From Octopus sinensis (taxonomy: Eukaryota), in NCBI RefSeq assembly GCF_006345805.1, contig NC_042998.1, positions 206,398,001 to 206,462,000 of the forward strand: 64,000 bases of DNA, written 5' to 3'. A model generated the notes under the pieces. The model did no database searches and was not told where the DNA came from. It worked only from the letters and a program-made list of their open reading frames with translations. The first letter of the stretch is position 1. Each line of letters starts with the position of its first letter. A program made the translations under genes and the position numbers. This document shows, one piece after another, positions 25 through 60,876 of this stretch.

Positions 25-70
25 GACACCTGAAGAAGGCTGGAGGGTTTATCAGCCGAAACGTTGTTTT
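25..70 (+). ncRNA. Minimal type I hammerhead ribozyme motif in a Penelope-like repeat
   Basis: GACAC-CTGAAGA-A-GGCTG(loop)CAGCC-GAAA-CGTT-GTTTT. The core is intact and stem I has one mismatch. Confidence 0.7.
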
Positions 71-14656: not shown

Positions 14657-14708
14657 CATAAGCTTCATTGTCTGAAGACATATCACTTTGAGGCCAATAA
14701 TAAGGGCA
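14657..14708 (-). CDS. RGS9/RGS11-like: R7-family RGS coding exon, DEP/DHEX junction: CPYYWPQSDMSSDNEAY
   Basis: ttgttttttcag|TGCCCTTATTATTGG...GCTTATG|gtaagt. The exon is 52 nt, phase 0 to 1, in frame after YRFQ. It corresponds to the R7 (T)PYFWP...NTDYA motif. Confidence 0.93.
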
Positions 14709-19369: not shown

Positions 19370-19376
19370 TATAGGT

Positions 19377-26111: not shown

Positions 26112-26147
26112 CTTTTTGATGAAGAGTGTAGGCTCGAAATGTAAAAG
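26112..26147 (+). ncRNA. Degenerate minimal hammerhead motif (Penelope-like repeat ~26085-26230)
   Basis: CTTT-TTGATGA-A-GAGT-GTAG-GCTC-GAAA-TGTA-AAAG. There is a C3>T change in the core. Confidence 0.55.
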
Positions 26148-26231
26148 ACTTTCTCACTTTTCCGAGTGTCAAACTAATACACCTGATTGTTCATACACCT
26201 GTCTTCATCTTTCTGTAAGTTTCAACTATAT

Positions 26232-26475
26232 ATGGAGGGATCCAGAGGTAGTATGCATTAACTGTTAGACATTATATTATATTCTGTCTATTTATTTATT
26301 TTAAACAGTTATCAGAATATATATACATGTTCTTTCTCTATTCTAGAAATTACTGGTACTTATATATGTAAAACACAATCCATACACGTGTATATATATT
26401 CTCAGAATTGTTCAAAATAAATAAATAGACATAATATAATGTCTAACAGTTGATGCATCTCAGGATCCCCTCCAT
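26232..26475. mobile_element. Foldback MITE with ~90-bp imperfect TIRs
   Basis: ATGGAGGGATCC...TGTTAGACATTATATTAT is matched by ATAATATAATGTCTAACA...GGATCCCCTCCAT. Confidence 0.75.
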
Positions 26476-29352: not shown

Positions 29353-29513
29353 CTGAAAGCGGTATAAGGATCCATCTTCTTTGACACTCAACGATTTCGT
29401 ATCGGTGATTGGGAAAATATATCCATAGTGACAGAGGAGACTGGCTAAGTGGTAGACTTCGTTAAGTTCTGTGATATCAAGTTTCTTCATCAACCAGTCA
29501 ATAAGATCACTTC
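29353..29513 (-). CDS. RGS9/RGS11-like: R7-family RGS coding exon, DEP domain core: (G)SDLIDWLMKKLDITELNEVYHLASLLCHYGYIFPITDTKSLSVKEDGSLYRFQ
   Basis: gttgttgttgttgcag|GAAGTGAT...CGCTTTCAG|gtaaca. The exon is 161 nt, phase 1 to 0, and joins the 47002 exon in frame (G|GA=Gly). GYIFP and DGSLYRFQ are R7 RGS hallmarks. Overlaps ORF 29275..29493. Confidence 0.95.
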
Positions 29514-29687
29514 CTGCAACAACAACAACAAAAACACATTTATAATAACAACAACAACTGTTTCTAATTTTGGCACAAGGTCAGCAATTTTAAGGGGAGG
29601 GGTGCAAGTATTTGACCAGTACATGTATGTTACCACACCCAGGGGCGATGAGTAGTATAGTTGACCTAAACTGAATCTGAACCCAGG

Positions 29688-29890
29688 TCCCCTGACTATA
29701 CCAGTGCCCCACCCCTGACTACATCAGTGACCCCTGACTATACCAGTGCCCGCTGACTATAGCAGTGCCCCTGCCTATACCAGTGTCCCCTGCCTATACC
29801 AGTGCCCGCTGACTATACTAGTGACCCTTGACTATACCAGTGCCCCCTGCCTATACCAGTGACCCTTTACTATGTCAGTGCCCCTTGACT
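29688..29890. repeat. ~18-19-bp minisatellite (CCCTGACTATACCAGTG) x~10 fused to an RTE 3' fragment (29880-30090)
   Basis: Directly visible. The last unit runs into CCTTGACTGGCTCATGTGCCGGTGGCAC. Confidence 0.85.
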
Positions 29891-30478
29891 GGCTCATGTG
29901 CCGGTGGCACATAAAAAGCACCCACTACACTCTTGGAGTGGTTGGCATTAGGAAGGGCATCCAGCTGTAAAAATTTTACCAGATAAGACTGGAGACTGGT
30001 GCAGCCTCCTGGCTTGTCAGTCCTCAGTCAAACCGTCCAACCCATGCCAGCATGGAAAGCGGACATTGAATGATGATGATGATGATGATGGTATAAAGAG
30101 CCAAAACAATTGCTGTTTAGTGTTTCATCTGATGAGCTAAAAATTCTACCAGCCAACATCATCATCATCATTTAACGTCCATTTTCCATGCTGGCATGGG
30201 TTGGACAGTTCAATGGAAGCTGGCAAGCCAGAGAGCTGCATCAGGCCCCAGTTGATTGTTTTAGCATGGGTTCTACAGCTGGATACTCTTCCTAATGCCA
30301 ACCACTTTACAGAATGTACTGGGTATTATTTTTTATGGGCCACTGGCACAGGTGCCAGTCAGGTTAGAATTAGTGACAGGAAGGGCATACACCTCAACAA
30401 ATTCCGTTTGTCTCACACACGAGTGGATGTTAAATGATGATTGATGATGCGGATGCTGCAGAGCATGACAAGTCAGGG

Positions 30479-31000
30479 TCAATAAATACTTGCCACTATA
30501 TTTTTTTCATCAACCAAACATGAACCATTTTGCTGTACAATGCTTCTCCATCTTTCCTTTAACTTGAAAATACCCTCTTCCCAGAATTGAGGTGGTTTCA
30601 TGGCAAAGAATTCATCAAGGTATCTTTTTACGGCATCCAAAGAATTGAAATTTTTACCATTAAGACTATTCTGCAGAGACCTGAATAAGTGGAAATCCGA
30701 AGGAGCAATATCTGGTGAATATGGAGGGTGGGGTAACACATCCCAGCCAAGCTGCAGCAATTTGTGTCTGGTTCCCAAAGCATCAAGTGCTGAAAATGAA
30801 CTTTCTTATCTTCCATTTTAAAGGGTTACAGAATTAACACAGGCTATAGGAACATAAACCCTCTTCCACGAAAAGATAGCTTAAACTGTGCTCTAAATGG
30901 AGGTGTAGTCAAATCTTATTTTATGGACTCAACCATGTTCTAAGATAAGTTGAAAGCTAAGCTACTATAAATTGGCACAAACTTTCTAGACAACCCAATA
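30479..31000 (-). mobile_element. Internally deleted mariner transposon
   Basis: TA|TTGGGTTGTCTAGAAAGTTTGTGCCAAT TIR at 30971-30998. N-terminus MEDKKVHFQHLMLW (ATG 30816) is fused to the C-terminus LGTRHKLLQLGWDVLPHPPYSPDIAPSDFHLFRSLQNSL. Confidence 0.92.
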
Positions 31001-31974
31001 CATTAAATGATGATGATTATAAGAGAATATGAGACAATGATCCCTTGCATTAGCACAAGACATTGCAGAGGAGAGAAATGGTTGATTGGTTGATGGAATC
31101 AGACTCCTGCTAATGTCTGCTGGTTATTTTAATAGACTCCAGAGGGACGACAGACATAAAACTGACTCTTCACTTTTCCCGATTGCTATCATCTCATTTC
31201 AAGATAACCGTGTATTTGTGCATAACAAAGCTGTAAATAAAGAATTCTTGTATATTTGGAATTATTCTGTGATACCGAAAGAGAAGCAGGTCTGTGAGAG
31301 AGAGAATCACAGTCCTCTGAAAAAATCATATCTTTTTTCTTTTTTTGGTTTTTTTTTCTGTTTTATTGTAATTCTTTTTCTGTTTTTTTTTCCTCTCTTT
31401 TATTCTGCAGTTGTCTTCAGAGAGAATTTCCATATATTTCTTTCTTTCTTTCTTTATTTATTTATTTATATCCTGTTTAATTCGGTATCCGGCAACTTTC
31501 TCCAGTTTCTCAAAGCAAAGATAGAGAAGCAATTCAACAGCGCCACTCCCCCCCCCCCCCGCCCTGCTAATGTCTTCTGCTGCTGCTGCAGTGGAAGACA
31601 GTCTCACAAGCAATAAACTTAATCAATGATAACCTCACTGAGAGAGAATCTCAATGCAGATAAATTGCCATTTCTTATTAGAAACCGTGCGACTCCCAGA
31701 CCCGCTCCACCCGACCCCAACCCCAAACCAAGACACTTCTCATTCTTGTTATTGTGTTTTACATTTAGATTTTTTTCAGAAGTATGTGGCTCAGTGGTTA
31801 AGGTACTCAGCTCACACTCATACAATTGTGAGTTCAATTCCCGGCAGTGTGTTGTATCCTTGAGCAGGACACTTGACATCACGTTGCTCCAGTCTGCTCA
31901 GATGGTAAAAATTAATAGTACCAGTAATTCAAAGGGAGCCAGCCTTGTCACACTGAATCTCCCTGAAAACTACA

Positions 31975-32442
31975 TTAACCCTTTTGCTACCGTATTTCTG
32001 TTGAGATGCTCTCTGTTTCTTTCAATTAATTTCAAATATAACAAAGAATTTAGTAAAATAACTTTGTTATCATTCAGCTAGTATTAGGAACATAATTGTG
32101 ACTAAGGTTTGGTAGAAGATTTTAATTCAAAACTTAAGAAAACAAGACAATTGTACTACAGAACCAGAGGTGGTTTCAGCCAGGGTTAAGAATTGTTTCT
32201 CTATTATATATTTTAACCCTTTTTTTACCATATTTCTGTTGAGATGCTCTGTGTTTCTTTCAATTAATTCTAAATATAACAAAGAATTTAGTAAAATAAC
32301 TTTGTTATCATTCAGCTAGTGTTAGGAACATAAATTGTGACTAAGGTTTGGTGGAAGATTTTGATTAAAAACTTATGAAAACAAGGCATTTGTATTACAG
32401 AGCCAGAGCTGGTTTCAGCTGGGTTGGTAATGAAAGGGTTAA
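31975..32442. mobile_element. Two tandem piggyBac-type MITEs inserted at a TTAA of a SINE tail
   Basis: TTAACCCT...AGGGTTAA twice (31975-32189 and 32213-32442). The host reads ACTACA-TTAA-GGGTACAC across the insert, as in the intact SINE at 929-945. Confidence 0.85.
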
Positions 32443-33564
32443 GGGTACACATGTCTGTGGAATACTCAGTGACTTGAACGTTAATTTCACAAGCTGGCTG
32501 TTCCATTCATTGGATCAACTGGAACACTTGTCCTCGTAACCAAAAGAGTGCCATTATCGGCACTAGGGAGGACACCAAGTAATTTGATTAAGTGTGGGGG
32601 TGTAATATTAAGGGTGGTGTTGAGACACAGAAAGAACAGGTGAATGGTTGAAGGGGGAGACATATAGTAACCCTTATTTGAAATGAAAGCTGATCAAGGG
32701 GAAGATGTATCAGAACAAACCCTCGAGTGATGGGAAGGTGAATATAAGTGGTATGAGTGGCTGGGTGGTAAGTGGCTTGCTTATGAACCACATGGTTCCA
32801 GGTTCAGTTCCACTGCGTGGCACCTTGGGCAAGTGTCTTCTACAATAGCCACGGGCCAACCAAAGCCTAGTGAATGGATTTGGTAGACAGAAACTGAAAG
32901 AAGCTTGTTGTATATATGTATATATAAATATATATATATATATGTTTATATGCATGTATGTGTGTGTATATGTTTGTGTGTCTGTTTGTCCCCCCCTCCC
33001 CCAAACATTGCTTGCCAGCCGATGTTGGTGTGTTTACCGCCCTGTAACTTAGCGGTTCGGCAAAAGAGACCAATAGAATAAGTACTAGTCTTACAGCGAA
33101 TAGGTCCTGGGGTTGATTTGCTTGACTAAAGGCGGTGCTCCAGCATGGCCACAGTCACATGACAGAAAAGAGTAAAGAGTATGGATGGCTGTGTTATTAA
33201 TATCCTGTAAGCATAGGAGTAGCTATAGCAAGAAGCTTGTTTCCCAACCACATGGTTCCAGGTTCAGTCCCACTGCGTGGCACCTTGGGCAAGTGTCTTC
33301 TACTATAGCCTCGGGCTGACCAAAGCCTTGTGAGTGGATTTGGTAGACGGAAACTGAAAGAAGCCCATTATATATATATATCTGTGTATATATTTGTGTG
33401 TCTGTGTTTGTCCCCCACCACTATCGCTTGACAACTGATGGTGGTGTGTTTATGTACCCGTTAATTTAGCAGTTCAGCAAAAGAGATCGATAGAATAAGT
33501 ACCAGGCTAACAAAGAACAAGTCCTGGAGTCGATTTGTTTGACTAAAGGCAGTGCTCCAGCATT

Positions 33565-33860
33565 GTTGTTGTTGTTTGTTCCTTCTCGAGCCATCCCTGG
33601 CTCATAGGGCCGGTTTCCCGGTTTTCTTGGCATATAGGTTCCCCACCTGGACGGGACACCGCTCCGGCGCAGGTGAGCTGCAAAATGCAGGAGGAAAGAG
33701 TGAGAGAAAGTTGTGGCGAAAGAATCAGCAGAAGTTTGCCGTTACCTTCTGCCGGAGCCGCGTGGAGCATATAAACACACACATCGCCTGGTCTGAGATT
33801 CGAACCTGCAATCCTTTGACCGCGAGTCCACTGCTTAACCACTAGGCCATGTGCCTCCCA
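33565..33860 (-). mobile_element. SINE family C (tail ii) inside a SINE A tail
   Basis: Colinear with 19502-19805. Confidence 0.85.
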
Positions 33861-34309
33861 CGATGGTGCTCCAGCATGGCCACAATCAAATGACCAAAAC
33901 AAGTTAAAGAACACAAGAATCTCTGACATAAATATGAACTTGTCACAATCTCAGATCCAAATCTTGTAGAAACAGGCCGTATTGATAAGACATCGAAAGG
34001 CGAACAGAAGGAAATGTGGGTTGTCTCTTGTGTCCATGACCAACACATTGAACTTACAAGTGATCAGTTTCGCTCACTTACTCTTTTACTTGTTTCAGTC
34101 ATTTGACTGCGGCCATGCTGGAGCACTGCCTTTAGTCGAGCAAATCGACCCCGGGACTTATTCTATCGGTCTCTTTTGCCGAACTGCTAAGTGACTTGCT
34201 ATCCATGATTTTCATTCATGATCATTGAATGTTTAGAGTTATCTAGGAGTACATTAGCTAATGTGTCAAGACGGGAAAGTGCGATGATCTGCGAGAAATT
34301 TGACTCATA

Positions 34310-34626
34310 CAGTAATCCGTCGCCTGATACAGTAATCCACTGATACAGTATCGTGGTTCAGCTATCGCGGTTTATTATCTAAGCTTACATAGATTCCTCC
34401 GTGGTGTTGTTCTACATTTATAATAAAATGAATATATACAAATTATAAAAATAAAAAAAAAATATACAGTATAGGCATAGGAGTGGCTGTGTGGTAAGTA
34501 ACTTGCTTACCAACCACATGGTTCCGGGTTCAGTCCCACTGCATGGCACCTTGGGCAAGTGTCTTCTACTATAGCCTCGGACCGACCAAAGCCTTGTGAG
34601 TGAAACTGAAAGAAGCCCATTGTGTG

Positions 34627-34672
<46 letters not shown>

Positions 34673-34971
34673 TGTGTGTTTGTCCCTCTAGCATTGCTTG
34701 ACAACCGATGCTGGTGTGTTTACATCCCTGTAACTTAGCAGTTTGGCAAAAGAGACCGATAGAATAAGTACTAGGCTTACAAAGAATAAGTCCTGGCATC
34801 GATTTGCTTGACTAAAGGCGGTGCTCCAGCATGGCCACAGTCAAATGACTGAAACAAATAAAAGAGTAAAAGAGAGAGTACAGTACTGCTTCTACTTCGC
34901 GGATTTTCACCTATCGCCGGGGGATGGGTGGGGTTTGGAACGTAACACCCAGGATAGTTGAGGGATTAGTG
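34310..34971. mobile_element. Tigger-like MITE (TA|CAGTAATCC...GGATTAGTG|TA) interrupted by a SINE A (34472-34878)
   Basis: Inverted termini with TA flanks. TACAGTA occurs on both sides of the SINE. Confidence 0.65.
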
Positions 34972-35319
34972 TATTTCTTGCAATTATAGAGATTATAGAG
35001 AGACATACTGGTAATGTAGTGGGGTCCATTTTTCTGTTTTGCCCTTTTGTCTTGCAAGGTACTTGGTGACCCTGTCTGAGATGATGCCATATAGAAAACA
35101 CTGGTGCTAATGCTGGGTGAAAAGCGCCGGTGCCAGTCCCACATAGAAAAAACACTGGTAATGGTGCCATGTAAAAAGGGCGCCCAGTGGACTCTGTAAA
35201 GTGGTTGGCGTTAGGAAGAAGGACATCAAGGCTGTAAGGGACCATGCCAAAACAGACCATGGGCTCTCAACCGTGCCAGCTGCTATCAAACTCATGGCAG
35301 CATGGAAAACGGATGTTTG

Positions 35320-35338
35320 ATGATGATGATGATGATGC

Positions 35339-35405
<67 letters not shown>

Positions 35406-35410
35406 GATGC

Positions 35411-35488
<78 letters not shown>
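35320..35488. repeat. (GAT)n microsatellite, tail of an RTE-type fragment
   Basis: Follows CATGGAAAACGGATGTTT. Confidence 0.95.
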
Positions 35489-35489
<1 letters not shown>

Positions 35490-36183
35490 ATCCTCCTGTA
35501 CCAACTTACAACTGATATCGAGTCCGGTCAAAAGAAATCGATATTTTACAATTATATTACAAATAAGCCTGGATTTGTTCCTGCGACATAGAGACACAAA
35601 TATATGCATGTGAGTGTGTGTGGATGTGTGTATAGATGCGTATGTACACAAGCACAGATACATGTCTCCATACATGTAGATGTTCGCATATATATACGCG
35701 TGTGTGTGTGTGTGTTTGTGTGTACCAGCACACGTCCCCATACATACATTCATATATCCAAGTATATCATATGTACGCATATATTTAAACCTATCAATAT
35801 ACACACTTCCATACACAGGCGTGCGCACGCACATAATTACACCACCACCTCCCCCCCTCCCCAACAATCTTGTCTGCTGTTCTTTTCTTTGTTTTTCTCT
35901 CTCTCTCGCTTTTCTCTTCGACCTACCCAGAGTTGATATTCAAGTCGATGGAGCAGATAGCCATAACAAGGATCAATTTATAGTCTCCGGCTGCAAGGAC
36001 TACTACCACTACTACTACCACTACTACTGCTATTGTTATTTCACATACACAATCACCCACACACACACGCAAAGAGGCCAAACAACACTTTTCTTCCTTG
36101 CCAATAAACCACCTGACCATCTCAACCATCATCATCATCATCATCATTCCCTTCACAACTACCATCACAACTATCAACAACAA

Positions 36184-36720
36184 CTGACCAGCATCTGTAA
36201 AATCTCCACCACCACCATCACCATCACAACCAACATCATCATCATCATCACCATCACAACTACCACCACCACCACCAACATCTGACCAGCATCTGTAAAA
36301 TCTCCACCACCACCAGTATCACAACCATATTATGACGACCACCACCACCGCCACCACCATCATCAACAACAACAACATCTGACCAGCATCTGTAAAATCT
36401 CCACCACCACCACCAGTATCACAACCATATTATGACGACCACCACCACCGCCACCACCATCATCAACAACAACAACATCTGACCAGCATCTGTAAAATCT
36501 CCACCACACCACCACATCACAACCATCATCATCATCACATCTACCACCGCCACCAGTATCACAACCATATTACGACCACCACCACCACCACCACCACCAT
36601 CTCAACCATCATCATCATCATCCATCACATCTACCACCACCATCATCAACAACATCTGACCAGCATCTGTAAAATCTCCACCACTACCATCACCACCACC
36701 AGTATCACAACCCTATTACG
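36184..36720. repeat. ~97-100-bp minisatellite with (CAC/CAT/CAA)n filler, 5 anchors
   Basis: CTGACCAGCATCTGTAAAATCTCCACCA recurs at ~36184, 36282, 36378, 36479 and 36656. Confidence 0.9.
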
Positions 36721-36824
36721 ACCACCACCACCACCCTTATTCTTTCCACTACTCTCTCCATCTCCACAACCAATATTACCACTTTAAATGTCCCTCATTA
36801 AAGCACTTTCCTTCCCCCCCTATC

Positions 36825-36855
<31 letters not shown>

Positions 36856-38066
36856 TGTTGTAGATTTTCATTGGTTTGTCTCTTTTTTTGTTTATTCTTC
36901 TTCATACTCCTATTGTTGTTGTTGTTGTTGTTGTTGTTGCTGTCTTCGTTTGTTTGCTGTCTTTGTCCTTGGCTCAATGCCCATCATCATGTGACAAGAC
37001 ATGTTCTGAATTCATTAAGGACCTAAGAGGCCCTCATTCATATTATTGAGTGTTCACCAAATGCCAAGAGAGAATTGGAAGAGATTTCAAAGAAATGGTA
37101 AAAACAAGAAAAGAAGAATTGATTGGAAAATGTCATTGAAGATAATTACCTCCCCGTCCCTTCACCAGCCATAACTCATTTCCACTGTGAATCCCTAAAA
37201 ACGATATCTCGAGCAATGATAATGAATTCGATGAGATTTATGGCCTGGCACAACACCAAATTTTATAAACTGAAAGATAATATTCTTCAATTAAAGTTCC
37301 CTGCAACCTGAAGATATCACTGGTACTTTGAGTCAACCATTTTGTATTTCCTTATGAAACAACATGCTGCTAGGGGTCACACAAACCATGAGGTGTACAA
37401 AATCTGGCAGCTAGGGGTCACACAAACCATGAGGTGTACAAAATCTGGCAGTAAGCTTTCGCTCCTTTAAATTCTCTTCCATGAAGCAACGTAAATAATG
37501 GCAGGAAGAAATCTCGTCGTAGACACACTCTACCGTTTAACTCTTGTAAACGTGGTTCCAGACCCAGTGGTTGTCAACCATTCTTTAACTGTGGATCCCT
37601 TAAATTCCTATTCCACACAAGTGGGCTTTTGTTAGCCAATTCAATGTTTGAAGAAAATTCCAATTAAATTTTTATAATTAAATATTTTTAGGAATTGTGT
37701 AAAAAAAATTGTCAAAAATATTTTGATTGTTGAATTAGAACCAGTTTATTATTCTTATATTCTTTTACGTGTTTCAGTCATTTGACTGTGGCCATGTTGG
37801 AGCACTGCCTTTAAATCGAACAAATCGACCCCCAGGACTTATTCTTTGTAAGTCCAGTACTTATTCTATCGGTCTCTTTTTGCCGAACCGCTAAGTTACA
37901 AGGATGTAGACACACCATTAAGCGATGATGGGTGGGGCAAAAACACACACACACACATATGTATACAGTGAATCCAAACAAAGAAGAACAAACAAGGAAA
38001 AACAATAACGCAAGGACGTGGCACAAGTTCTGCATTATCAGACGCTCAGGAAAGGAAGGAAAGAGG

Positions 38067-38102
38067 ATTTAACGTTTCGAGCCAAGGCTCTTCTTCAGAA
38101 AT
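38067..38102 (-). ncRNA. Intact minimal type I hammerhead ribozyme motif (Penelope-like)
   Basis: Minus strand reads ATTT-CTGAAGA-A-GAGC-CTTG-GCTC-GAAA-CGTT-AAAT. Stems I and II pair perfectly and helix III is the palindromic ACGT. Confidence 0.8.
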
Positions 38103-38909
38103 AGAAGAAAGTCCAAAAGAAGAGAAGACGGAGGAAGAAAATTGCCAATGATACACATGCGGTTATATTTTGAAATGACCAAAAGGGAATGGGTGAAGGA
38201 AAAGTTCTAAGATAGGAGAGCGCAAGAAAAGGAGGTATGCGTGTGGGTATGTGCCTGTGTGCAGGTCTGTGTAAGTGTAAGTGTGTGTGTAATAATAGCA
38301 TGTGTGTGTGAGTGAACTTGAGTCAATGTGCTAGGAAGAATTTACAGTAAGAATTTATAGTAGGAGTGGCTGCCTTTTAGTGTAGGAGAATGGTCGGGAG
38401 AAAGGTGTTTAACTGGTAGTTTGAAGTATGTGTGTGTGCACGTGTAAGTATATGTTTTGTGTGCAGTGTGTGCCTGTGTCTGTGCGTGTGTGTATGTGGA
38501 GTTGTGTTTTAAGTTGTGTCTGTGGAGTAAATGTGTATTACTCTGCATGTGTGCATGCGTTATCATCATCATATTAACATCCATGTTACCATGGTTGTAT
38601 TAAGTCAGATGGAATTTGTTGAGACACATTTTCTACAGCTGGATGCTCTTCCTGTCACCAATGCTCACCATTTTCCAAGTAAATTAATCTCTCTTCATGG
38701 TCGGACGACATTTTTCAAAGAAGCCCGAAAACAAAGGATGCTTGTTTGCAGCTATCATGTAATGTCAAGACAACAGTACACACACACACACACACGCACA
38801 CAGCAGGCTTCTTCCAGTTTCCATCAACCAAATCCACTCATAAGGGTTTGGTCGGCCCAACCTCCTTAACCACAGAGTCACACCTGCACCAGTCATATAT
38901 ACTCTAGAG

Positions 38910-39021
38910 CTGTGTTTCTCAACCAAGGTTCCCCGGAACCCTAAGGTTCCAGAAAAGGTTCCTAGGGGTTCTGTGAGAAAGAGGGAGATAAGCTAATGCT
39001 AATGCATGATATATATATATA

Positions 39022-39056
<35 letters not shown>

Positions 39057-39510
39057 TGGGGGGGGGGGCTTTGAAAGGGTCTCAGGGAGTAGTGTCCCAA
39101 CGTTCCTGAGTTAGTTTTCCACCACATTTCTTAAAAATAATCGTAGAGGCCTTGGTCTCAGGGACCACTCATGTTTAGAAACTGAGGTTGGGGGTAAGCA
39201 AGGACATGCTCCCCAAAGAAAATCCAGCTCCAAAAAGGCCTTATGATAGTAGGGGAGAATGAGCACCAGCCAGCCAGCCCAAAGGTTGGGGTGGGCTGCA
39301 CCTGCCTTGGTTGCTATGGCATTGAGGTAGATCCAGCCACCTTTGTTAACAGGGACAAAACCTGGATTTAAAACACTTGATGATGATGATGATGATATAT
39401 GATATTCACCACATGAATTACGATGAAAAAATATGAGAAAGATATGGTATATAATTTTTTTTTGGTGCAGGGGTTCCACGACACATGTAATTTATTTTAA
39501 GGGTTACACA
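38910..39510 (+). mobile_element. hAT-type element fragment
   Basis: CTCTAGAG target followed by CTGTGTTTCTCAACC. The right end is lost at a SINE A. Confidence 0.5.
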
Positions 39511-39908
39511 GCAGTGGCTGTGTGGTAAGTAGCTTGGTTACAAACCACATGGTTCCGGGTTCAGTCCCACTGCGTGGCATCTTGGGCAAGTGTCTTCTGC
39601 TATAGCCTCGGGCCGACCAAAGCCTTGTCAGTGGATTTGGTAGACGGAAACTGAAAGAAGCCCGTCGTATATATGTATATATATATATATATGCGTGTGT
39701 GTGTCTGTGTTTGTCCCCCTAGCATTGCTTGACAACCGATGCTGGTGTGTTTATGTCCCCGTTACTTAGCGGTTCGGCAAAAGAGACCGATAGAATAAGT
39801 ACTGGGCTTACAAAAGAATAAGTCCCGGGGTCGAGTTGCTCGATTAAAGGCGGTGCTCCAGCATGGCCGCAGTCAAATGACTGAAACAAATAAAAGAGTA
39901 AAAGAGTA
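39510..39908 (+). mobile_element. SINE family A
   Basis: Near-consensus copy. Confidence 0.88.
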
Positions 39909-40156
39909 AACGGTAAAAGGGTTGAGGAACACTGCTGGAAATCAAGCATAAAGCAACAGCACCATCCCCGCTGTGGAGGGCACCACTGACAGGCTTAACA
40001 GTCTCTTAATTCCGTTTCCCACTCGTTTATCTGATACCCAGCTTAACGAGGTCTGGTTTAGTGAGAGCTCACTTTATGTATCATCTCTTTTGAATAACAG
40101 CTGATATGAATCGTAGTTGGTTGGGTTCTCTACTCATGCTTTACATCACATATATA

Positions 40157-40387
40157 TATTTCTTTACTACCCACAAGGGGCTAAACATAGAAGGGACAAA
40201 CAAAGACAGACAAAGGGATTAAGTCGATTACATCGACTCCAGTGCATAACTGGTACTTAATTTATCGACCTCGAAAGGATGAAAGGCAAAGTCGACCTCG
40301 GCGGAATTTGAACTCGGAACGTAACGACAGACGAAATACTGCTACAAATTTCGCCCGGCATGCTAACGTTTCTACCAGCTTGCCACC
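40157..40387 (-). mobile_element. SINE family B with 16-bp TSD
   Basis: TTACATCACATATATA at 40141-40156 and 40388-40403. Confidence 0.9.
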
Positions 40388-41137
40388 TTACATCACATAT
40401 ATAGAGGGAGAGAGTAACAGAGAGAGAGGGAGGGAGAGAAAGAGGGAGGGAGAGAGAGAGGGAAGGAGGGAGGGAGAGAGAGTTAATACTAGCAGTGCAA
40501 GGTCAATGTCTGATAACTCTCTAAAAAATACACTTTTTTCTTTCATTCTTTTTTTTTAAAGGAAGTTTGCAGAAATAGGTTTTTAATGAAGTGAGCTGTG
40601 CAAACCAAATCCAAAAACGGATTAGTTATTGCAAATAAACAAATGAGAAATTTGTTTTTATTTAATTTTATTTTCAGGTAATATTTTCTTTTGAAAATTG
40701 GTATTCATTTCATGATTTTGTCTAAGCGTCAAGGGATTTGTGAGAAATGAAATTCCAATCAGCTAAAATGGATTCTCTTCCCCCAGTTTGGTTTGGTTTA
40801 ATAAGGGTTCAATGTAGAGATCTCTTTTGATCTTTGGCTTGTTCCAGTTATTGGAATGTGGCCATGCTGGGGCACCAGCTTGAACGGGTTTTTGTCAAAC
40901 AAATCAATGCCAGTACTTAGTTTAAAGTCTGCTAACTCATTCACTTTTGGTGAACCACTAAGTTACAGGGACATAAACAAACTAACACACCCACACATAC
41001 ACACACAAGCTGGGCATCCGGAGTTTCCGACTACCAATTTCATTCATAAGCAGTGGTGTAGCTAGAGTAAACCATGCCTGGGACAAGCCGCAAAAATGGG
41101 CCCCCCCCCACCACCAATTACAAAATCCATGATATTA

Positions 41138-41358
41138 CATAGTACTTTTGGAGTAAAGATTGTTTGCCAACATAACATGGCAGTCCTGGTTTAGGACGAA
41201 TGTTGCTGTAATTTAGCCTCAGGAGACATCGTCTCCAGCTGGCTCTACGACATGATCTGTGTCCTTATAGTTTTGAACAAGGGAATTACAGCAACATTTG
41301 TCTTAAACCAGGACTGCCATGTTATGTCGGCAAACAATCTTTTCTCCAAAGTACTGTG
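41138..41358. mobile_element. MITE with ~75-bp TIRs
   Basis: AGTACTTTTGGAG...TGTTGCTGTAATT is matched by AATTACAGCAACA...CTCCAAAGTACT. Confidence 0.85.
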
Positions 41359-41529
41359 GCTGAATATCTCTCGTTGTGAGATTTATAAACAGAGTTTTCA
41401 AAGTGACAACTAGTCACTGATCTATAAATTAGAAAATTACTACATTTCGAATGGGAATTTGGCAGCGCCACCTCTAGCCAAACAATTATTCTGTGCTCAT
41501 GAAGGGAAAAAAAAAACATTCTTATTTGT

Positions 41530-41820
41530 ATTGCTTTTACGTCCTGTTTTTGTCACTTTTTTTCTTTCCTTGTTTTACCCCTCTGCAAAGGAATTTTATT
41601 TAATTCTTTTGCAGGAAGGACTGGTTCGACCGGATCGTGTTCTGTCCTTACCTTCAAAACACGCATGGAGTCGAACCAGGGACAGCTGATGAAGGGGAAT
41701 ATTCCTTGTATTGTTTGTCTTGTACTCTGTTTTTTCGTTGTTAAAAAAAGTCTGTTTCCATGTTTGTTTTTATGTTTTCGTTTCATGTTGAGTTCTATGT
41801 CTATTTGTGGGGTCCTGTAC
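41530..41820 (+). repeat. Interspersed repeat, possibly Penelope-like terminal repeat; inverted copy at ~43682-43900
   Basis: Shared CTGA(T/A)GAAGGGGAATATTCCTTG...GTCTTGTACTCTG. Confidence 0.5.
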
Positions 41821-41894
41821 TCATATATATATATGTATGCATGTATATATACATGTAGATGTAGGTACGTACATATATGTATGTATGCATATAT

Positions 41895-41967
<73 letters not shown>

Positions 41968-42351
41968 GTATAGTTTCTGTCTACCAAATCTACTCACAAT
42001 ACTTTGGTCGGCCCGAGGCTATAGTAGAAGACACTTGCCCAAGGTGTCACGCAGTGGGACTGAACCCAGAAGCATGTGGTTGGGAAGCAAGCTTCTTACC
42101 ACACAGCCACGCCTGACAGACAGACATACATACATTACATTACATACATATATGTATATATGACATGCAGACACACACACACATTTACAAACAGGAAATG
42201 AGAGATCATAAAAAGTTAATATCTGCTAACAACAACAATAACAACAACAACAGAAATAGAATTGGTCTCTGCCAGTTCTGTTCCGCAGTTCTCAACCGAT
42301 TCTCTCTAAGCACATTCTCGCTTGAATCTGTTGTTAGCTGTTATATCCACT

Positions 42352-42672
42352 CCACCACCACCACCACCACCACCACTACTACTACACCACCACCACCACC
42401 ACTACTACTACTACCACCACCACTACCACCACCACCACCACTACTACTACTACCACCACCACTACCACCACCACCACCACCACTACTACTACTACCACCA
42501 CCACCACCACTACCATCACCACCACCACTACTACCATCACCACCACCACTACTACCACCACCACCACCACCACTACCACCACCACCACCACCACCACCAC
42601 CACCACCACCACCACCACCACCACTACCACCACTACCACCATCACCACCACCACTACCACCACCACTACCAT
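42352..42672. repeat. (CCA)n/(CTA)n compound microsatellite
   Basis: Source of the poly-P/H/T/G/V ORFs. Confidence 0.95.
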
Positions 42673-43057
42673 TGCCTACAGCAACCACACAAGCACCGTC
42701 CAACACTCGACTCCGGCGCCACTTTTCTACCCCCCTCTCAACCCCTTTGCTCCCCCCTCCCCCCGTAAACCACCACCACTGGCACGGCAACGGTTATTAT
42801 CACCTCCATTACTATCCTCCTGCTCCCACCACCCCACCCCACCCCACACCACACCACACCTCGTATATTCACTGGGAAGGAAAGCATAATGCCAGGAGGC
42901 GTGCATGCAAAGGTGCAGCCGCATTGCACCGAACATGCGCATGCAAACATGCATTTTAGAAAGGTCATCGTCAATGGAGATAATTAGATGGAAAGTTTAA
43001 AAAATAATTACACACACCTTTCACTTTCTCTCCCCTCTTCCCTCTGTTATTCTCACA

Positions 43058-43092
<35 letters not shown>

Positions 43093-43494
43093 TGTGCGTG
43101 TGTATAAAGATATACAAGCAGATTTGGCTGTGTAGTCAAGAAGCTTGATTCCCAGTTATACAGTCCCAGGTTCAGTTCCACTGCGTGGCAACTTGGGCAA
43201 ATATCTTCCGTTATAGCCCTGGGCCAACCAAAACATTTATGACGAGATCTGGTAGCTGGAAACTGAAAGAAGCCTGTCATGTGTGTGTGTATGTGTGTCT
43301 CCCACCACGGCTTGATAACTGATTTTGATGTTTACATCTCTGTGACATAGCGGTTCAGCAAAAGAGACTGACACAATACATACCAGACTTTAACAAACAT
43401 AAGTACTGGGAGTCAATTCATTCAATAAAAATTCTTCAAGGCGGTGCCCCAGCATGGCCACAGTCTAAAGACTGAAGCAAGTAAAGAATAAAGG

Positions 43495-43568
<74 letters not shown>

Positions 43569-44005
43569 CTTAGAAATGGATGTGTGGCGTTCGATCATAC
43601 AATAATATAAATAATATATAAACATATGCAAATATACATACCTATATGTACATACCTACATATATATGTATATATACATGCATAGATGTGTACAGGACAT
43701 CAAAAAAACGTTGAACACAATGAGAAACGAAAACATAAAAACATGGAAACGAACTTTTTTTTCAAACAACGAAAAAACAGAGTACAAGACATACAACACA
43801 AGGAATATTCCCCTTCTTCAGTTGTCCGTTTTATCTACTCCACGTTTCGAAGGTAAGGACAAGACGCGACTTCGTTGAAACAGTCCTTCCCGCAAAGCAA
43901 ATTAAATAGAATTTGGCATTTTTTGCTGAAGGGTAAAAGTGGTAACAAGAACAGGACAATGAGAACAAAACAAGACAGTAAAAACAATGCATATATATTA
44001 ATAAA

Positions 44006-44400
44006 CTAGCAGTATCGCCCGGCGTTGCTCGGGTTTGTAAGGGAAATAACTATATAAGCATTTTTAGAGATGTAAAGTATAATAGCCATCTCAATATGGC
44101 TAACCACAAAGGGGGGGGTGTTACTGTAGCTTTTTACGTTCTGAGATTTAATAATAAATTTTTAGAGAGTTACTTCCCTTATATAATAGCAAAAAAATGC
44201 ATTAAAATGGAATAAAATTATGGTAAATTTTTTTTAAATCGTAGACTCATCGTAGACGCGCGCTAATACCCAGAAGGGCTCGATATGAATCACGACTATA
44301 AGATACCTGGTTTTGGTTAAACTGCACCGCAAAATGTAGGAGTAGTTAGGAATCTAAATCGTAGGAGACAGACACACAACTTCACTTTTATATATAAAGA
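44006..44400 (-). mobile_element. Non-autonomous Helitron family 1, copy 3
   Basis: Reverse complement of 4072-4466 with A|TC and CTAG|T ends. Confidence 0.88.
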
Positions 44401-44689
44401 TATCAGGGTAAGAAAAATTTTGGAAATTTTTACTCCCAGTGGCCTAGCTTGTAGAAAACCAGTCAATAGACTAAATATTATTCATATAAATACAGTGTAC
44501 ATTTAAACACATAAGAGGTATCCATCATGGGATACCTGGCATGCTAGAAGGAACAGCCAAAATCCAAACCACTGTTAGGGGTAATTAACAGAGTGGGGTA
44601 ACGATTGAAGAAAGAAACTACAATAAAGGGAGAGGAGCAGGTTTCTTACTGAAGACATTGCTCTCATTAAAAATCAATTCCAACCATTT

Positions 44690-45180
44690 TATGGTTAGCA
44701 TTTTAATGCCAGACACTTTCTGTCAGGCGATCCAGCTAGGGTTATTCAAGCTCCCAGTCTGTGTCTGCTTAGTTTCCACTTCCTGATCCACAGTCCCCTT
44801 GGGGCAACCTTTGCTGCCCCCACAGCTGACCTGATGGCCTTGTACCTATTGGCCCCAGTGATACTCAGCATGCTGTAAGCTCTGCAGAGGGATTGACCTG
44901 CTAACCCTGTGCCTCACACTTTACTTGCCACTCTTTGCTTTCACATCAGCTCACCATATTTCCATCTCTTAATCATCTCCTCCTCAATGTGGTCCTTTCA
45001 AGGAACAAAGTCATCTACCTGGATGCTTCCGAGATCAGCCCCTTATCTAAGTTATGTAATGTTGAGACAGCAGCTTCTGGGGGACATCAGCTGCTTTTCC
45101 CGGTTAACCTTCACCTCTTAGTTTTTTGCCATTGCAAATAAGCCAGGTAAAGTGGACCAGGCAGCTGGCTTACCTGCAAT
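44690..45180 (-). mobile_element. HERO-like LINE (restriction-like endonuclease) C-terminus and 3' UTR, pseudogenised
   Basis: Frameshifted GLFAMAKN*EVKV..EKQL, DHIEEE..KRWKYGEL and LCRAYSMLSITGANRYKAIRSA..LWIRK, followed by a UTR similar to HERO 3' ends (recall). Confidence 0.7.
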
Positions 45181-45589
45181 GACATAGAAATCGACGATTA
45201 TCTTATGAACTTTGTTAGCTTACAGCCAGATGCCCTTCCTGAAGCCAACCAACCAATTAAGAGAGTGTACTGGGCGCTTTTATGTGGCACCAACACCAGT
45301 GAGGTAGCCAAGTACCTGCAAGATAACACCCCTTAACTAAAGGATTCATAGCTGAATGCCTGAATAACAACTTATAGTTTCATCAGAGCTTCAAATTTGA
45401 AGTGCGATTCATTTGGAAAAACATTTACATTTATGCATGTACACAGAAAGATATGTATATTGAGTTCTACACCATGTTATTAATATTGCAATGCCTAAGC
45501 AAAATGTGTGTGTGTCTCACCACTGCATGGCAACCATTGGCAGTTCAGCAAAAAAAAAAACCCAGATAGAACAAATACCAGGCTTATTA

Positions 45590-45920
45590 CTCCATTCATA
45601 TTTTCATTCGAGTTTTGGTCTACCTTCTGTAATCTGTCTGAGTGTCGTGTCTGTTCTAAGCATAAATAAGATCCTAACAGTTATGTTATCAACTGAGATG
45701 TTCTAATTGAGCATGTTAGTAGAGCACTGACAAGCTTTTCTTCTCCTTGAGCTCCTGCCAGTGTTCACTTATCTGCTCACCTATGCTACATGCTGTCTCT
45801 CCAGCATATGTCATTGTTCTGTTTCTGCACTGCTCCTCTGTACACCTTAGTCTATAGACTACATTCCTGGTTTTACAGTTTACTCTACACACTATACAGT
45901 CCTTGTTAGAAAGAAATTCT
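45590..45920 (-). mobile_element. Second Penelope-like GIY-YIG endonuclease relic
   Basis: CRVNCKTRNVVYRLRCTEEQCRNRTMTYAGETACSIGEQISEH follows the VVY...YxGET...EH pattern. Confidence 0.8.
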
Positions 45921-46303
45921 GTTGTTATTATTAAAAGCAGGAAACTAGCAGAATCATTACTGCGCCAGACGAATTGCTTACCAGCATTTCTTTTGACTTC
46001 ATGCTTTGGGTTCAAATGCCACAAGATCAAATTTGTCTTTCATCTTTCAAGGGGTTGATAAAGTACCGGTCAATTGCTGCGGTTCATTGAAACTAACACC
46101 TTCCCTACAACATTGCTGATCTTGTGCCTTCATAAAGAGGAAGGGGTAAAAATTTTCAGGGAAATTTTTGTGGGGGTGGGTGGGGCTAATTGCCATTTTG
46201 AGAATTTCTTCTTTGGCAGGCACAGACACAGTGTTGCAAGCAAGCATTTGGACCAGGTTTGGGGATTGAAACATGTTGCTACATGAATGAATGCATTACT
46301 TTT

Positions 46304-46462
46304 TTACTGTAGTAGTAGTAGTAGTAGCAGCAGCAGTACCAGCAGTAGTAGTAGTGGCAGTAGTAGTAGTAGTAGTAGTAATAGTGGCAGTAGTAGTAGT
46401 AGTAGTAGTATAGTGGCAGTAGTAGTAGTAGTAGTAATAGTAGTAGTAGTAGTAGTAGTAGT
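46304..46462. repeat. (AGT)n microsatellite
   Basis: Directly visible. Confidence 0.95.
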
Positions 46463-46637
46463 AGAAACAAGCCATTGGCCAGAGTCTATGCCACCTTTAA
46501 TGCCCATCCTGCAACACCAGTTTCAAAGACCTGACCTGAAGGCCACTGCAGTTGTAGCCATCCCTTCTTCATTCACCGAACCATTAAAAGAAAAAAAAAC
46601 CTAAAGTTGATATCTCAAAGACACAATAACCAATTCT

Positions 46638-46828
46638 GTTATGTCTGGGGAGAGTCATACTCTTTTTGTGCCTTATAATTTAACACACCCACTGGTAAAA
46701 TTTCCACTTATTTCTTCTTCAAAAATTTTCATTGCGTCTTGTAACCTTTTCAATAGTTTTGGAAATTTTACAGGTGCGTCTGTTAAATAATAAGGCACCA
46801 AAAGAGAATGACTCTCCCCAGACAACAA
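46638..46828. mobile_element. MITE with ~45-bp TIRs, ~80 nt 3' of the RGS exon donor
   Basis: TGTCTGGGGAGAGTCATACTCTTTTTGTGCCTTAT is matched by ATAAGGCACCAAAAGAGAATGACTCTCCCCAGACA. Confidence 0.8.
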
Positions 46829-46905
46829 AATATGCTTCAACACACGAACTCACATGAATCTTGCAAACCAAATCCAAAAACGAAATACAATAAGCAATGT
46901 TTTAC

Positions 46906-47002
46906 CTGTGAATGCTTTCGGAATCGTTGTGAGGAACTGTTTTTGTGTGCGAACTTGGATGCCATTACTCGGATCACTCATCTGCTTCACAAGCTGTTCC
47001 AT
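46906..47002 (-). CDS. RGS9/RGS11-like: R7-family RGS coding exon, start of DEP domain: MEQLVKQMSDPSNGIQVRTQKQFLTTIPKAFT(G)
   Basis: Minus strand reads gttgttgttgtttcag|ATGGAACAG...TTCACAG|gtaaaa. The exon is 97 nt, phase 0 to 1. The peptide matches the R7 RGS motif M-x-x-x-x-x-x-M-x-D-x-x-x-G-(I/V)-x-x-R-x-x-K-x-F-L-x-x-I-P-x-x-F-x-G. Absent from the ORF track because it is too short. Confidence 0.93.
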
Positions 47003-60577: not shown

Positions 60578-60613
60578 CTTTTATGTTTCGAGCCTACGCT
60601 CTTCTACAGAAAG
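60578..60613 (-). ncRNA. Variant minimal hammerhead motif (same repeat family as 26112)
   Basis: Minus strand reads CTTT-CTGTAGA-A-GAGC-GTAG-GCTC-GAAA-CATA-AAAG. The core has A6>T. Confidence 0.55.
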
Positions 60614-60876
60614 GGACACAGAAAAAACAAGGAGAGAAAAAAATGTGTGTAGTGGCTAACGATCTATCATGGCGACTGATATATATGTATGTATATGTAA
60701 TTATAAATATAAGTAATTATATGTAATTATAAATAAGGGCAAAAAGAAAAAGCAAGGATGCAGAGACACAAGCAATGCGAGGAGGAGATGAGGATGTAAA
60801 TATTCTCTGCCTGGGTCTACACTTTATTCAGGGCTGATTACAGATCAATGAAGTCTGCAATTGTTGTCCTTAGACA

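What the first reader, a model, noticed from the sequence alone, without database searches (positions are those of the whole stretch)
38067..38102. Intact Penelope-type hammerhead ribozyme on the sense strand of an RGS intron
Seen: the minus strand reads ATTT-CTGAAGA-A-GAGC-CTTG-GCTC-GAAA-CGTT-AAAT. This is a complete CUGANGA/GAAA core with paired stems I and II, a palindromic ACGU helix III and a GUU cleavage triplet. It lies in the 17.4-kb intron, in the orientation transcribed with the RGS gene. Known: Penelope-like elements carry minimal type I hammerheads that cleave poorly as monomers and better as dimers. Inference: RGS pre-mRNA contains a potentially self-cleaving site, perhaps pairing with another copy, which could affect co-transcriptional splicing of a long intron.
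Basis: partly seen in the sequence, partly recalled or inferred. Interest (0 to 1): 0.72.

Follow-up and report, generated by a model that had tools for sequence, protein, structure and literature searches.

The report
Penelope-type minimal hammerhead relic in intron
The 36-base hammerhead-ribozyme motif is real, but it is an ordinary decayed leftover of a common Penelope-like retrotransposon sitting in a long intron of an octopus RGS7-like gene, and nothing suggests that it cuts the gene's RNA.

Summary
The minus strand at 38102-38067 reads ATTT-CTGAAGA-A-GAGC-CTTG-GCTC-GAAA-CGTT-AAAT, with every hammerhead core base intact. It lies in the sense orientation inside a 17,392-bp GT..AG intron of an R7-type RGS gene of an Octopus close to O. 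bimaculoides. It is not a chance match: none of 2000 shuffles fitted a full descriptor. The window also holds two homologous 36-nt copies (26112-26147 +, 60578-60613 -). Each has one core mutation and a CpG-decayed ACGT palindrome, and both share flanking sequence with the candidate. The units are about 200 bp long and end in (TA)n/(TG)n microsatellites 84-104 nt past the predicted cut site. That is the geometry of Penelope-like element 3' ends. The motif shows the published hallmarks of Penelope minimal hammerheads: a 4-bp helix I, an extra base before stem II, a G10.1-C11.1 pair, and no helix III beyond a palindromic ACGU. The functional inference is not supported. Helix III cannot form within one copy, helix I is four A-U pairs, and upstream UUCUUC pairs with the core. 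No usable partner copy lies on the transcribed strand. Published single minimal hammerheads show no detectable cleavage. Verdict: a new member of a known kind, of low interest.

The parts
38067..38102 (-). Minimal type I hammerhead motif with an intact core. It has a 4-bp helix I (all A-U), a bulged A between A9 and G10.1, a 4-bp stem II with a CUUG loop, palindromic A15.1-C-G-U16.1 with no loop 3, and U17. The predicted cut lies between 38071 and 38070.
   Evidence: Sequence read. Descriptor hit with 0 of 2000 shuffles. Covariance model 53.4 bits, by construction.
37956..38137 (-). Repeat unit carrying the motif: a short 5'-truncated 3'-terminal fragment of a Penelope-like or PLE-dependent retroelement. 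Weak homology to the 60.6-kb copy may reach about 38160.
   Evidence: nhmmer profile of the three copies matches 38137-37956. Three-way alignment. Pairwise BLAST.
37944..37967 (-). (TA)/(TG)n microsatellite that bounds the 3' end of the unit. It starts 104 nt after the predicted cut site.
   Evidence: The other two copies do the same at 84 and 95 nt.
26112..26147 (+). Decayed sister copy, CTTT-TTGATGA-A-GAGTGTAGGCTC-GAAA-TGTA-AAAG. It has C3->U and the ACGT palindrome decayed to ATGT. The unit spans 26057-26236. It is antisense to the RGS gene, in the next intron.
   Evidence: Relaxed descriptor, nhmmer, covariance model 53.9 bits.
60578..60613 (-). Decayed sister copy, CTTT-CTGTAGA-A-GAGCGTAGGCTC-GAAA-CATA-AAAG. 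It has A6->U and the palindrome decayed to ACAT. The unit spans 60478-60668. It is on the same strand as the gene but 13.6 kb upstream of exon 47002-46906.
26..69 (+). More distant minimal-hammerhead variant of another lineage, CTGAAGA-A-GGCTG..CAGCC-GAAA-CGTT. Helix I is interrupted. It is followed about 55 nt later by (TG)n.
   Evidence: Covariance model 16 bits, E 0.32.
29514..46905 (-). The 17,392-bp GT..AG intron of the R7-type RGS gene that contains the motif in sense orientation.
   Evidence: Splice sites read. The spliced product is a full DEP domain.
46906..47002 (-). RGS7-like exon MEQLVKQMSDPSNGIQVRTQKQFLTTIPKAFT(G). This is the start of the O. bimaculoides protein model.
   Evidence: tblastn, sequence, 99% identity to A0A0L8FYL9.
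29353..29513 (-). RGS7-like DEP-domain exon (G)SDLIDWL...GSLYRFQ.
14657..14708 (-). Next RGS7-like exon, CPYYWPQSDMSSDNEAY(G).

Best explanation
The motif is the hammerhead of a roughly 200-bp, severely 5'-truncated 3'-terminal fragment of a Penelope-like element, or of a short non-autonomous element mobilised by one. The fragment inserted long ago into a (TA)n/(TG)n microsatellite that lies inside an intron of an Octopus RGS7-like gene.

In the parent element the ribozyme sits in the pseudo-LTR. It works, if at all, only when two tandem copies pair through the palindromic ACGU to build a shared helix III.

Here it is a solitary copy. It is transcribed passively within the pre-mRNA, cannot build helix III, and is expected to be catalytically silent. 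Its intact core is what one expects for a fraction of a large, neutrally decaying family.

Shown: the sequence, family membership, flanking homology, microsatellite boundaries, gene, strand and intron. Inferred: Penelope origin, by architecture and by analogy with published elements, and catalytic inactivity, by folding and by published assays on other minimal hammerheads.
For: 1. All published non-descriptor hallmarks of PLE minimal hammerheads are present (PMC4209133; sequence). [quoted passage not shown]

2. It belongs to a dispersed family. Three copies in 64 kb share 27-30 of 36 bases in the ribozyme and 47-69% identity over about 100 nt downstream. Helix I shows one compensatory A-U to C-G change, and all 24 helix cells pair.

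3. The sister copies each carry one core mutation and CpG->TpG or CpA decay of the ACGT palindrome. This is neutral decay.

4. Each unit ends in a microsatellite 84, 95 or 104 nt past the cut site. In the Anolis Poseidon PLE, reverse transcription starts 111-118 bp into the ORF and the cut site is 26 bp after the start codon, which places insertion ends about 85-92 nt past the cut (PMC11167929). PLEs prefer microsatellite targets (PMC8557442).

5. GIY-YIG endonuclease remnants are in the same window (Pfam PF01541, E 6e-5). PLEs are abundant in Octopus, with an old burst at Jukes-Cantor distance about 0.2 (PMC13282606).

6. Inactivity. The monomer minimum-energy fold is stem II only, helix I probability is about 0, and the core is sequestered by upstream UUCUUC. 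The double-hammerhead dimer scores -4.1 against -21.5 kcal/mol. There is no partner. Published single minimal hammerheads show no detectable cleavage and dimers only low cleavage. No RNA-seq ends were found at the cut site of the Anolis element.
Against: - No RT/GIY-YIG ORF adjoins any of the three copies, so the physical link to a Penelope-like element is not shown here.
- Searches meant to supply that link found nothing.
- Stem II is 4 bp, whereas several published PLE families have 6-8 bp.
- Nearest-neighbour folding is a poor judge of hammerhead activity.
- Host chaperones have been proposed to help these motifs in vivo.
- The ribozyme segment is somewhat better conserved than its flanks (75-83% against 47-69%). 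This could reflect selection in the master element or, less likely, selection after insertion.
Confidence: 0.8

Rival explanations
1. A functional, possibly domesticated, intronic self-cleaving ribozyme. The sense-strand hammerhead would cut the RGS7-like pre-mRNA, alone, with a chaperone or by pairing with another copy, and so influence splicing of the 17.4-kb intron. This is the first reader's inference and resembles the RECK and CTCL intronic hammerheads of amniotes.
For: The core is fully intact, in sense orientation, in a long intron. It is the only intact copy of three. Intronic hammerheads with proposed roles in mRNA biogenesis exist in amniotes (PMC6155905). The ribozyme is a little better conserved than its flanks.
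Against: - Helix III cannot form within one copy, there are no loop 1-loop 2 contacts, and helix I is four A-U pairs.
- The core is sequestered in the predicted context fold, and the catalytic dimer is not competitive.
- There is no partner on the transcribed strand in the intron. The weak hit at 46726-46678 lacks stem II and GAAA.
- The 60.6-kb copy is mutated and mismatched.
- Single minimal hammerheads are inactive in vitro.
- One intact copy in three fits neutral decay at roughly 15% divergence per copy.
Confidence: 0.04
2. A solitary monomer of a non-LTR retrozyme: a short non-autonomous, hammerhead-bearing element that spreads through small circular RNAs, rather than a truncated autonomous Penelope-like element.
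For: The unit is short (about 180-210 bp), carries a type I hammerhead and encodes nothing. Two copies may share a 5' boundary near -60. A 2026 preprint derives animal retrozymes from PLE pseudo-LTRs and finds evenly dispersed monomers, about 43% of them intronic in Xenopus.
Against: - There is no tandem arrangement at any of the three loci.
- Classical retrozyme hammerheads are canonical, with a helix III stem and loop, not this minimal form (PMC7229834).
- The 3' ends sit at a fixed distance from the cut site, as for PLE insertions, rather than being circularly permuted.
Confidence: 0.13
3. A chance match to a short degenerate motif in AT-rich intronic DNA.
For: The bare pattern CTGANGA..GAAA occurs 7 times in the window against 2.9 expected. 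No Rfam model matches.
Against: The full descriptor hit 0 of 2000 shuffles. Two homologous copies share flanks with the candidate. One helix I pair shows a compensatory change.
Confidence: 0.01

Closest known systems
Minimal hammerheads (min-HHR) of metazoan Penelope-like elements (Cervera & de la Pena 2014, PMC4209133)
   Same: Type I topology, helix I of 4-5 bp, one unpaired base between A9 and G10.1, a G10.1-C11.1 pair, and no helix III or loop 3 beyond palindromic 15.2-16.2. Both occur as heterogeneous sequence families, mostly as solitary copies from truncated elements, and are expected to work only as dimers.
   Different: Stem II is 4 bp with a tetraloop rather than the 6-8 bp of the Schistosoma and Drosophila families. 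No PLE ORF or second pseudo-LTR adjoins this copy. I found no published description of cephalopod examples.
Poseidon PLE of Anolis carolinensis (PAc; PMC11167929)
   Same: The distance from the hammerhead cut site to the 3' end of genomic insertions is similar: about 85-92 nt in PAc and 84-104 nt here.
   Different: In PAc the ORF starts inside the hammerhead. A test for the same arrangement here found nothing, and the family consensus has no ATG at that place.
Non-LTR retrozymes of animals (PMC7229834; bioRxiv 10.64898/2026.07.22.740005)
   Same: Short non-coding units with a type I hammerhead, probably PLE-derived, with dispersed monomers common in introns.
   Different: Retrozymes are defined by tandem units and canonical hammerheads with helix III. 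This copy is single and minimal.
Conserved intronic hammerheads of amniotes (HH9 in RECK, HH10 in CTCL; reviewed in PMC6155905)
   Same: A sense-strand type I hammerhead inside an intron of a protein-coding gene, thought to derive from retroelements.
   Different: Those are full hammerheads with helix III and loop-loop contacts. They are active as monomers and ultraconserved across species. None of this holds or could be shown here, and Rfam HH9/HH10 do not match.

Membership tests
Hammerhead ribozyme (catalytic core) | Conserved boxes C3-U4-G5-A6-N7-G8-A9 and G12-A13-A14, with A15.1, U16.1 and H17 not G | tested here: met
   CTGAAGA at 38098-38092, GAAA at 38078-38075, U16.1 at 38072 and U17 at 38071.
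Hammerhead ribozyme (catalytic core) | Three helices (I, II, III) around the core within one molecule | tested here: not met
   Helices I and II (4 bp each) can be drawn. Helix III would be A-U closing a 2-nt loop, which cannot form within one copy. The monomer minimum-energy fold is stem II only.
Hammerhead ribozyme (catalytic core) | Mg2+-dependent self-cleavage 3' of H17 | not testable with these tools
   Needs an in vitro transcription and cleavage assay or RNA-end mapping.
Rfam hammerhead families (type I, II, III, HH9, HH10) | Score at or above the family's gathering threshold | tested here: not met
   No hammerhead hit at gathering on the whole window, nor at E<=10 on 37800-38400. The Rfam models expect a helix III hairpin.
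PLE minimal hammerhead (min-HHR) | Short helix I (4-5 bp) | tested here: met
   ATTT/AAAT. The sister copies have CTTT/AAAG, a compensatory change.
PLE minimal hammerhead (min-HHR) | Unpaired nucleotide between A9 and G10.1, and a G10.1-C11.1 pair | tested here: met
   A at 38091; G at 38090 pairs with C at 38079. The same holds in all three copies.
PLE minimal hammerhead (min-HHR) | No loop 3; palindromic 15.1-15.2-16.2-16.1 that allows a dimeric helix III | tested here: met
   ACGT at 38075-38072. It has decayed to ATGT and ACAT in the sister copies.
PLE minimal hammerhead (min-HHR) | Enlarged helix II (6-8 bp in the Schistosoma and Drosophila families; typical rather than universal) | tested here: not met
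   4 bp plus a CUUG tetraloop.
PLE minimal hammerhead (min-HHR) | Member of a genomic sequence family with covariation | tested here: inconclusive
   Three copies; 24 of 24 helix cells paired; one compensatory and one wobble change. 176 of 500 shuffles do as well, because three sequences are too few.
PLE minimal hammerhead (min-HHR) | Lies in a pseudo-LTR flanking an RT plus GIY-YIG ORF | tested here: inconclusive
   No ORF adjoins this or the sister copies. All are roughly 200-bp units between microsatellites, as published for most genomic min-HHRs. GIY-YIG remnants elsewhere in the window are not linked to them. Searches for a link failed.
PLE insertion architecture | 3' end of the insertion at a fixed short distance past the hammerhead (about 85-92 nt in PAc), with a microsatellite target | tested here: met
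   Microsatellites begin 104, 84 and 95 nt after the cut site. The comparison is with one characterised element only.
Non-LTR retrozyme | Head-to-tail tandem units, each with a canonical type I hammerhead | tested here: not met
   Single copy, no tandem repeat at the locus. Helix III is absent.
Domesticated intronic hammerhead (HH9/HH10-like) | Conserved in the orthologous intron across species | not testable with these tools
   No other cephalopod genome could be reached. Exact-ORF look-ups found nothing.
R7-family RGS gene (RGS6/7/9/11, EGL-10) | N-terminal DEP domain most similar to RGS7 and RGS9 | tested here: met
   Pfam DEP E 2.7e-18. PDB best hits are RGS7 at 1.3e-21 and RGS9 at 2.9e-18, against 3.6e-9 for PREX2.
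R7-family RGS gene (RGS6/7/9/11, EGL-10) | RGS box | tested here: inconclusive
   No RGS-box exon was found in the window, by regular expressions or by tblastn with an RGS7 probe recalled from memory. It presumably lies beyond position 1.

The most novel reading that the evidence does not exclude
Octopus long neural-gene introns may be seeded with sense-strand minimal hammerheads that still cleave in vivo. Cleavage would depend on an RNA chaperone, or on transient pairing with the many transcribed sister copies through the ACGU palindrome. Intact copies such as this one would then act as co-transcriptional break points, or as sources of small circular RNAs, and would tune the processing of genes like RGS7.
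Probability: 0.03. Interest if true: 0.6.

Novelty: new member of a known kind. Interest (0 to 1): 0.14.

Why it matters
It matters little on its own. Minimal hammerheads of Penelope-like elements occur by the thousands in many animal genomes, and many must lie in introns by chance. The result does document such a family in an octopus genome: three copies and one variant in 64 kb, which suggests a very high copy number. It also shows the same distance from the hammerhead to the insertion end as in a lizard element, which supports the generality of internal initiation of reverse transcription in these elements. If the functional reading were true, it would be a rare case of a ribozyme acting on a host pre-mRNA in an invertebrate. 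Nothing here points that way.

Tried and rejected
- **Rfam.** No hammerhead match on the whole window at gathering threshold or locally at E<=10. The only local hit was a chance snoRNA match at E 2.2.
- **RGS-box search.** Regular expressions found no RGS box. The gene was identified through its DEP and N-terminal exons instead.
- **Alternative helix III within one copy.** ACGU pairing with the downstream GCGU before C, with a 26-nt loop, leaves a poor helix I and is not kept in the sister copies. I rejected it by inspection.
- **Exact-ORF look-ups to reach other assemblies or species.** Four window ORFs and the O. bimaculoides protein were all not on record.
- **Homology search with the GIY-YIG remnant to fetch PLE loci.** No candidate was found.
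- **Test that a PLE ORF reads through the hammerhead, as in Anolis.** I searched a peptide alignment KSVGSKRKR...; 12 word-sharing candidates appeared and none scored. The family consensus has A, not T, at N7, so the ATG seen in copy 26112 is probably secondary.
- **Pattern scans of public collections.** The metagenome scan gave 2 hits, about the chance expectation. One lies inside a GC-rich bacterial ORF and one has no helix I. The viral contig scan gave 0 hits.
- **Covariance-model search with filters off.** The weak hit at 46726-46678(-), in the same intron and on the same strand, lacks stem II, GAAA and the family flanks. I rejected it as chance.
- **Papers not held.** Lunse et al. 2017 and de la Pena & Garcia-Robles 2010 are not in the library. 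I cite them only through reviews.

Full report
**Observation.** The minus strand from 38102 to 38067 reads ATTT CTGAAGA A GAGC CTTG GCTC GAAA CGTT AAAT, exactly as reported. In standard hammerhead numbering this gives C3-U4-G5-A6-A7-G8-A9 and one extra A. A 4-bp stem II follows, opening with G10.1-C11.1 and closed by a CUUG loop. Then come G12-A13-A14-A15.1, C15.2, G16.2, U16.1 and U17, with a 4-bp helix I made only of A-U pairs. The predicted scissile bond lies between 38071 and 38070.

**Chance.** The bare pattern CTGANGA..GAAA is common: 7 sites in the window against 2.9 expected. I wrote a general minimal-hammerhead descriptor requiring helix I of at least 4 bp, stem II of at least 3 bp, a bulge of 0-1 base, a palindromic 15.1-16.1 segment and H17 not G. 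It hit this site only, and none of 2000 dinucleotide-preserving shuffles. A looser version hit 1 of 2000. Rfam gave no hammerhead match, either at gathering threshold on the whole window or at E<=10 on 37800-38400. The Rfam models expect a helix III hairpin, which this motif lacks.

**Gene context.**
- A tblastn probe, an RGS7 sequence recalled from memory and used only as a lead, located two minus-strand exons.
- Reading the splice sites gave exon 47002-46906 and exon 29513-29353. They are separated by a GT..AG intron from 46905 to 29514, which is 17,392 bp.
- The spliced 86-aa product covers the whole Pfam DEP model, positions 1-72 of 72, at E 2.7e-18.
- Its best matches among solved structures are RGS7 (1.3e-21) and RGS9 (2.9e-18). 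Other DEP proteins score far worse, 3.6e-9 or weaker.
- It is 99% identical to an Octopus bimaculoides protein, UniRef A0A0L8FYL9. Single-residue differences there and in a third exon (14708-14657) suggest a sister species or another haplotype.

**A repeat family.** The site is unique in the window at up to 3 mismatches, and BLAST self-comparison found no repeat over it. An abundant SINE copy lies next to it at 37750-37917. A relaxed descriptor allowing one core mismatch found two further 36-nt copies:
- 26112-26147(+): CTTT TTGATGA A GAGTGTAGGCTC GAAA TGTA AAAG
- 60613-60578(-): CTTT CTGTAGA A GAGCGTAGGCTC GAAA CATA AAAG

They share 27-30 of 36 bases with the candidate. One has C3->U and the other A6->U, both at essential core positions. 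Both have lost the ACGT palindrome by CpG->TpG or CpG->CpA change. The outermost helix I pair is C-G in these two copies and A-U in the candidate, a compensatory change. All 24 helix cells pair, but three sequences give no statistical power: 176 of 500 shuffles do as well.

**Flanks and boundaries.** The flanks are homologous over about 30-60 nt upstream and about 100 nt or more downstream. A profile of the three copies finds only these three in the window. Each unit is bounded by (TA)n/(TG)n-type microsatellites, and the downstream one starts 104, 84 and 95 nt after the predicted cut site. A fourth, more distant minimal hammerhead lies at 26-69(+). It shares CTGAAGAAG and GAAACGTT but not the flanks.

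**What it is.**
- Cervera and de la Pena (PMC4209133) defined the minimal hammerheads of Penelope-like elements (PLEs). [quoted passage not shown] All are present here.
- They also report that most genomic copies are solitary and stem from truncated elements.
- PLE hammerheads lie in pseudo-LTRs near the 3' end, and PLEs favour microsatellite targets (PMC8557442).
- In the one PLE studied biochemically, the Anolis Poseidon element, reverse transcription starts 111-118 bp into the ORF and the cut site is 26 bp after the start codon. Genomic insertions therefore end about 85-92 nt past the cut (PMC11167929). The 84-104 nt found here agrees.
- The window also holds GIY-YIG endonuclease remnants (19792-20202, Pfam E 6e-5; probably also 45719-46039). 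Octopus genomes are rich in old PLE copies (PMC13282606 and PMC8967140).
- I therefore read the site as the hammerhead of a roughly 200-bp, 5'-truncated PLE 3' end, or of a PLE-dependent non-autonomous element.
- The physical link to a PLE ORF is not shown, and the searches meant to supply it failed.

**Does it work?**
- Helix III would be an A-U pair closing a 2-nt loop, which is sterically impossible, so a lone copy cannot fold into a hammerhead.
- The 36-mer's minimum-energy fold is stem II alone (-4.7 kcal/mol). Adding helix I costs energy (-3.0 kcal/mol).
- With 20-100 nt of native flanks, helix I has pairing probability about 0, and the upstream UUCUUC tract pairs with core GAAGAA.
- The intended double hammerhead of two identical copies scores -4.1 kcal/mol, against -21.5 for a non-catalytic dimer through stem II.
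- No second intact copy exists in the window.
- The only same-strand relative, at 60.6 kb, lies outside the intron, carries A6->U, and mismatches helix III and both helix I duplexes.
- A weak covariance-model hit in the same intron (46726-46678) lacks stem II and GAAA and is a chance match.
- Published single minimal hammerheads show no detectable cleavage, and dimers only low cleavage at high Mg2+ (review PMC6765202).
- In the Anolis element, core mutants do not affect insertion, and no RNA-seq ends map to the cut site.
- Folding energies are weak evidence for hammerheads, and helper proteins have been proposed, so inactivity is an inference, not a demonstration.

**Intactness and selection.** The copies differ by roughly 30% in the flanks, or about 15% per copy since insertion. 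The chance that about 11 invariant core positions all survive is then of the order of 0.1-0.2. One intact copy in three needs no selection. The ribozyme is better conserved than its flanks (75-83% against 47-69%), which is expected if the master elements were under selection for it.

**Comparison and novelty.** The closest known kind is the PLE minimal hammerhead, and the motif meets its sequence-level definition apart from a shorter stem II. It is not a retrozyme as defined, because there is no tandem array and no helix III. It is not of the conserved amniote intronic type (HH9/HH10), which are full hammerheads that are active as monomers and ultraconserved (PMC6155905). I found no paper describing these motifs in cephalopods, but their presence there is expected. 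This is a new member of a known kind, of low interest.

Noticed in passing
window 26-69 (+): A second, unrelated-flank minimal hammerhead variant lies at the very start of the window: CTGAAGA-A-GGCTG..CAGCC-GAAA-CGTT. Its helix I is interrupted, and (TG)n follows about 55 nt later. It probably comes from another PLE lineage. Its upstream part is cut off by the window edge.
   Followed up: partly
window 19792-20202 (-) and 45719-46039 (-): Two ORF remnants carry GIY-YIG endonuclease signatures typical of Penelope-like elements (..NLIYLITC / GCKRQYIGHT.. and ..VVYRLRC..YAGET..). Pfam GIY-YIG confirms the first (E 6e-5) but not the second. No hammerhead of the family lies next to either.
   Followed up: partly
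window 38103-38125 (-) relative to 38098-38091: A polypyrimidine tract UUCUUC just upstream of the motif is complementary to the core's GAAGAA. It forms a hairpin in the predicted minimum-energy fold and would compete with the catalytic fold.
   Followed up: yes
window 37750-37917 and more than 20 other places (e.g. 5877-6037, 19206-19371, 34712-34873, 39743-39909): An abundant SINE-like repeat of about 165 bp (core ..TTTGACTGCGGCCATGCTGGAGCAC..) is present at 75-89% identity. About 49% of the window is repeated within the window. ARAGORN finds no tRNA-like gene.
   Followed up: partly
window 30482-30805 (-): An ORF remnant reads ..DVLPHPPYSPDIAPSDFHLFRSLQ.., which from memory is the hallmark of mariner/Tc1 transposases. 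Pfam gave no hit at E<=0.1.
   Followed up: partly
window 36109-36750: A tandem array of 97-100-nt units rich in CCA/CAT runs, including a perfect 100-nt duplication (36304-36403 and 36404-36503). A long (GAT)n lies nearby at about 35310-35490, and a 41-bp tandem duplication at 37366-37447.
   Followed up: no
window 41147-41213 and 41284-41350: An inverted repeat with 67-nt arms, 94% complementary and 70 nt apart, lies inside the same intron. It may be a MITE or a hairpin-forming element.
   Followed up: no
window 42320-42790: A long low-complexity CCN/CAY tract translates as poly-Pro, poly-His or poly-Gly runs depending on the frame. It coincides with a strong GC-skew excursion.
   Followed up: no
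window 26119-26121 (+): In the 26-kb copy, N7=U makes the core box CUGAUGA supply an ATG that opens a 49-codon frame (MKSVGSKCKRL..). This recalls the Anolis PLE, whose ORF starts inside the hammerhead. The G-S-K encoded by stem II plus GAAA would fit the G-x-K of the PLE N-terminal GxKF/Y motif. A database test found nothing.
   Followed up: partly
L001 1662-1688 (-) (metagenome contig MDSQ01052127.1): A eukaryote-like 3-kb metagenome contig holds CTGAAGAAGAGCGTTGGCTCGAAACGTC, nearly the same core and stem II, but no helix I can be drawn. It may be a chance match or a related motif from another animal.
   Followed up: partly
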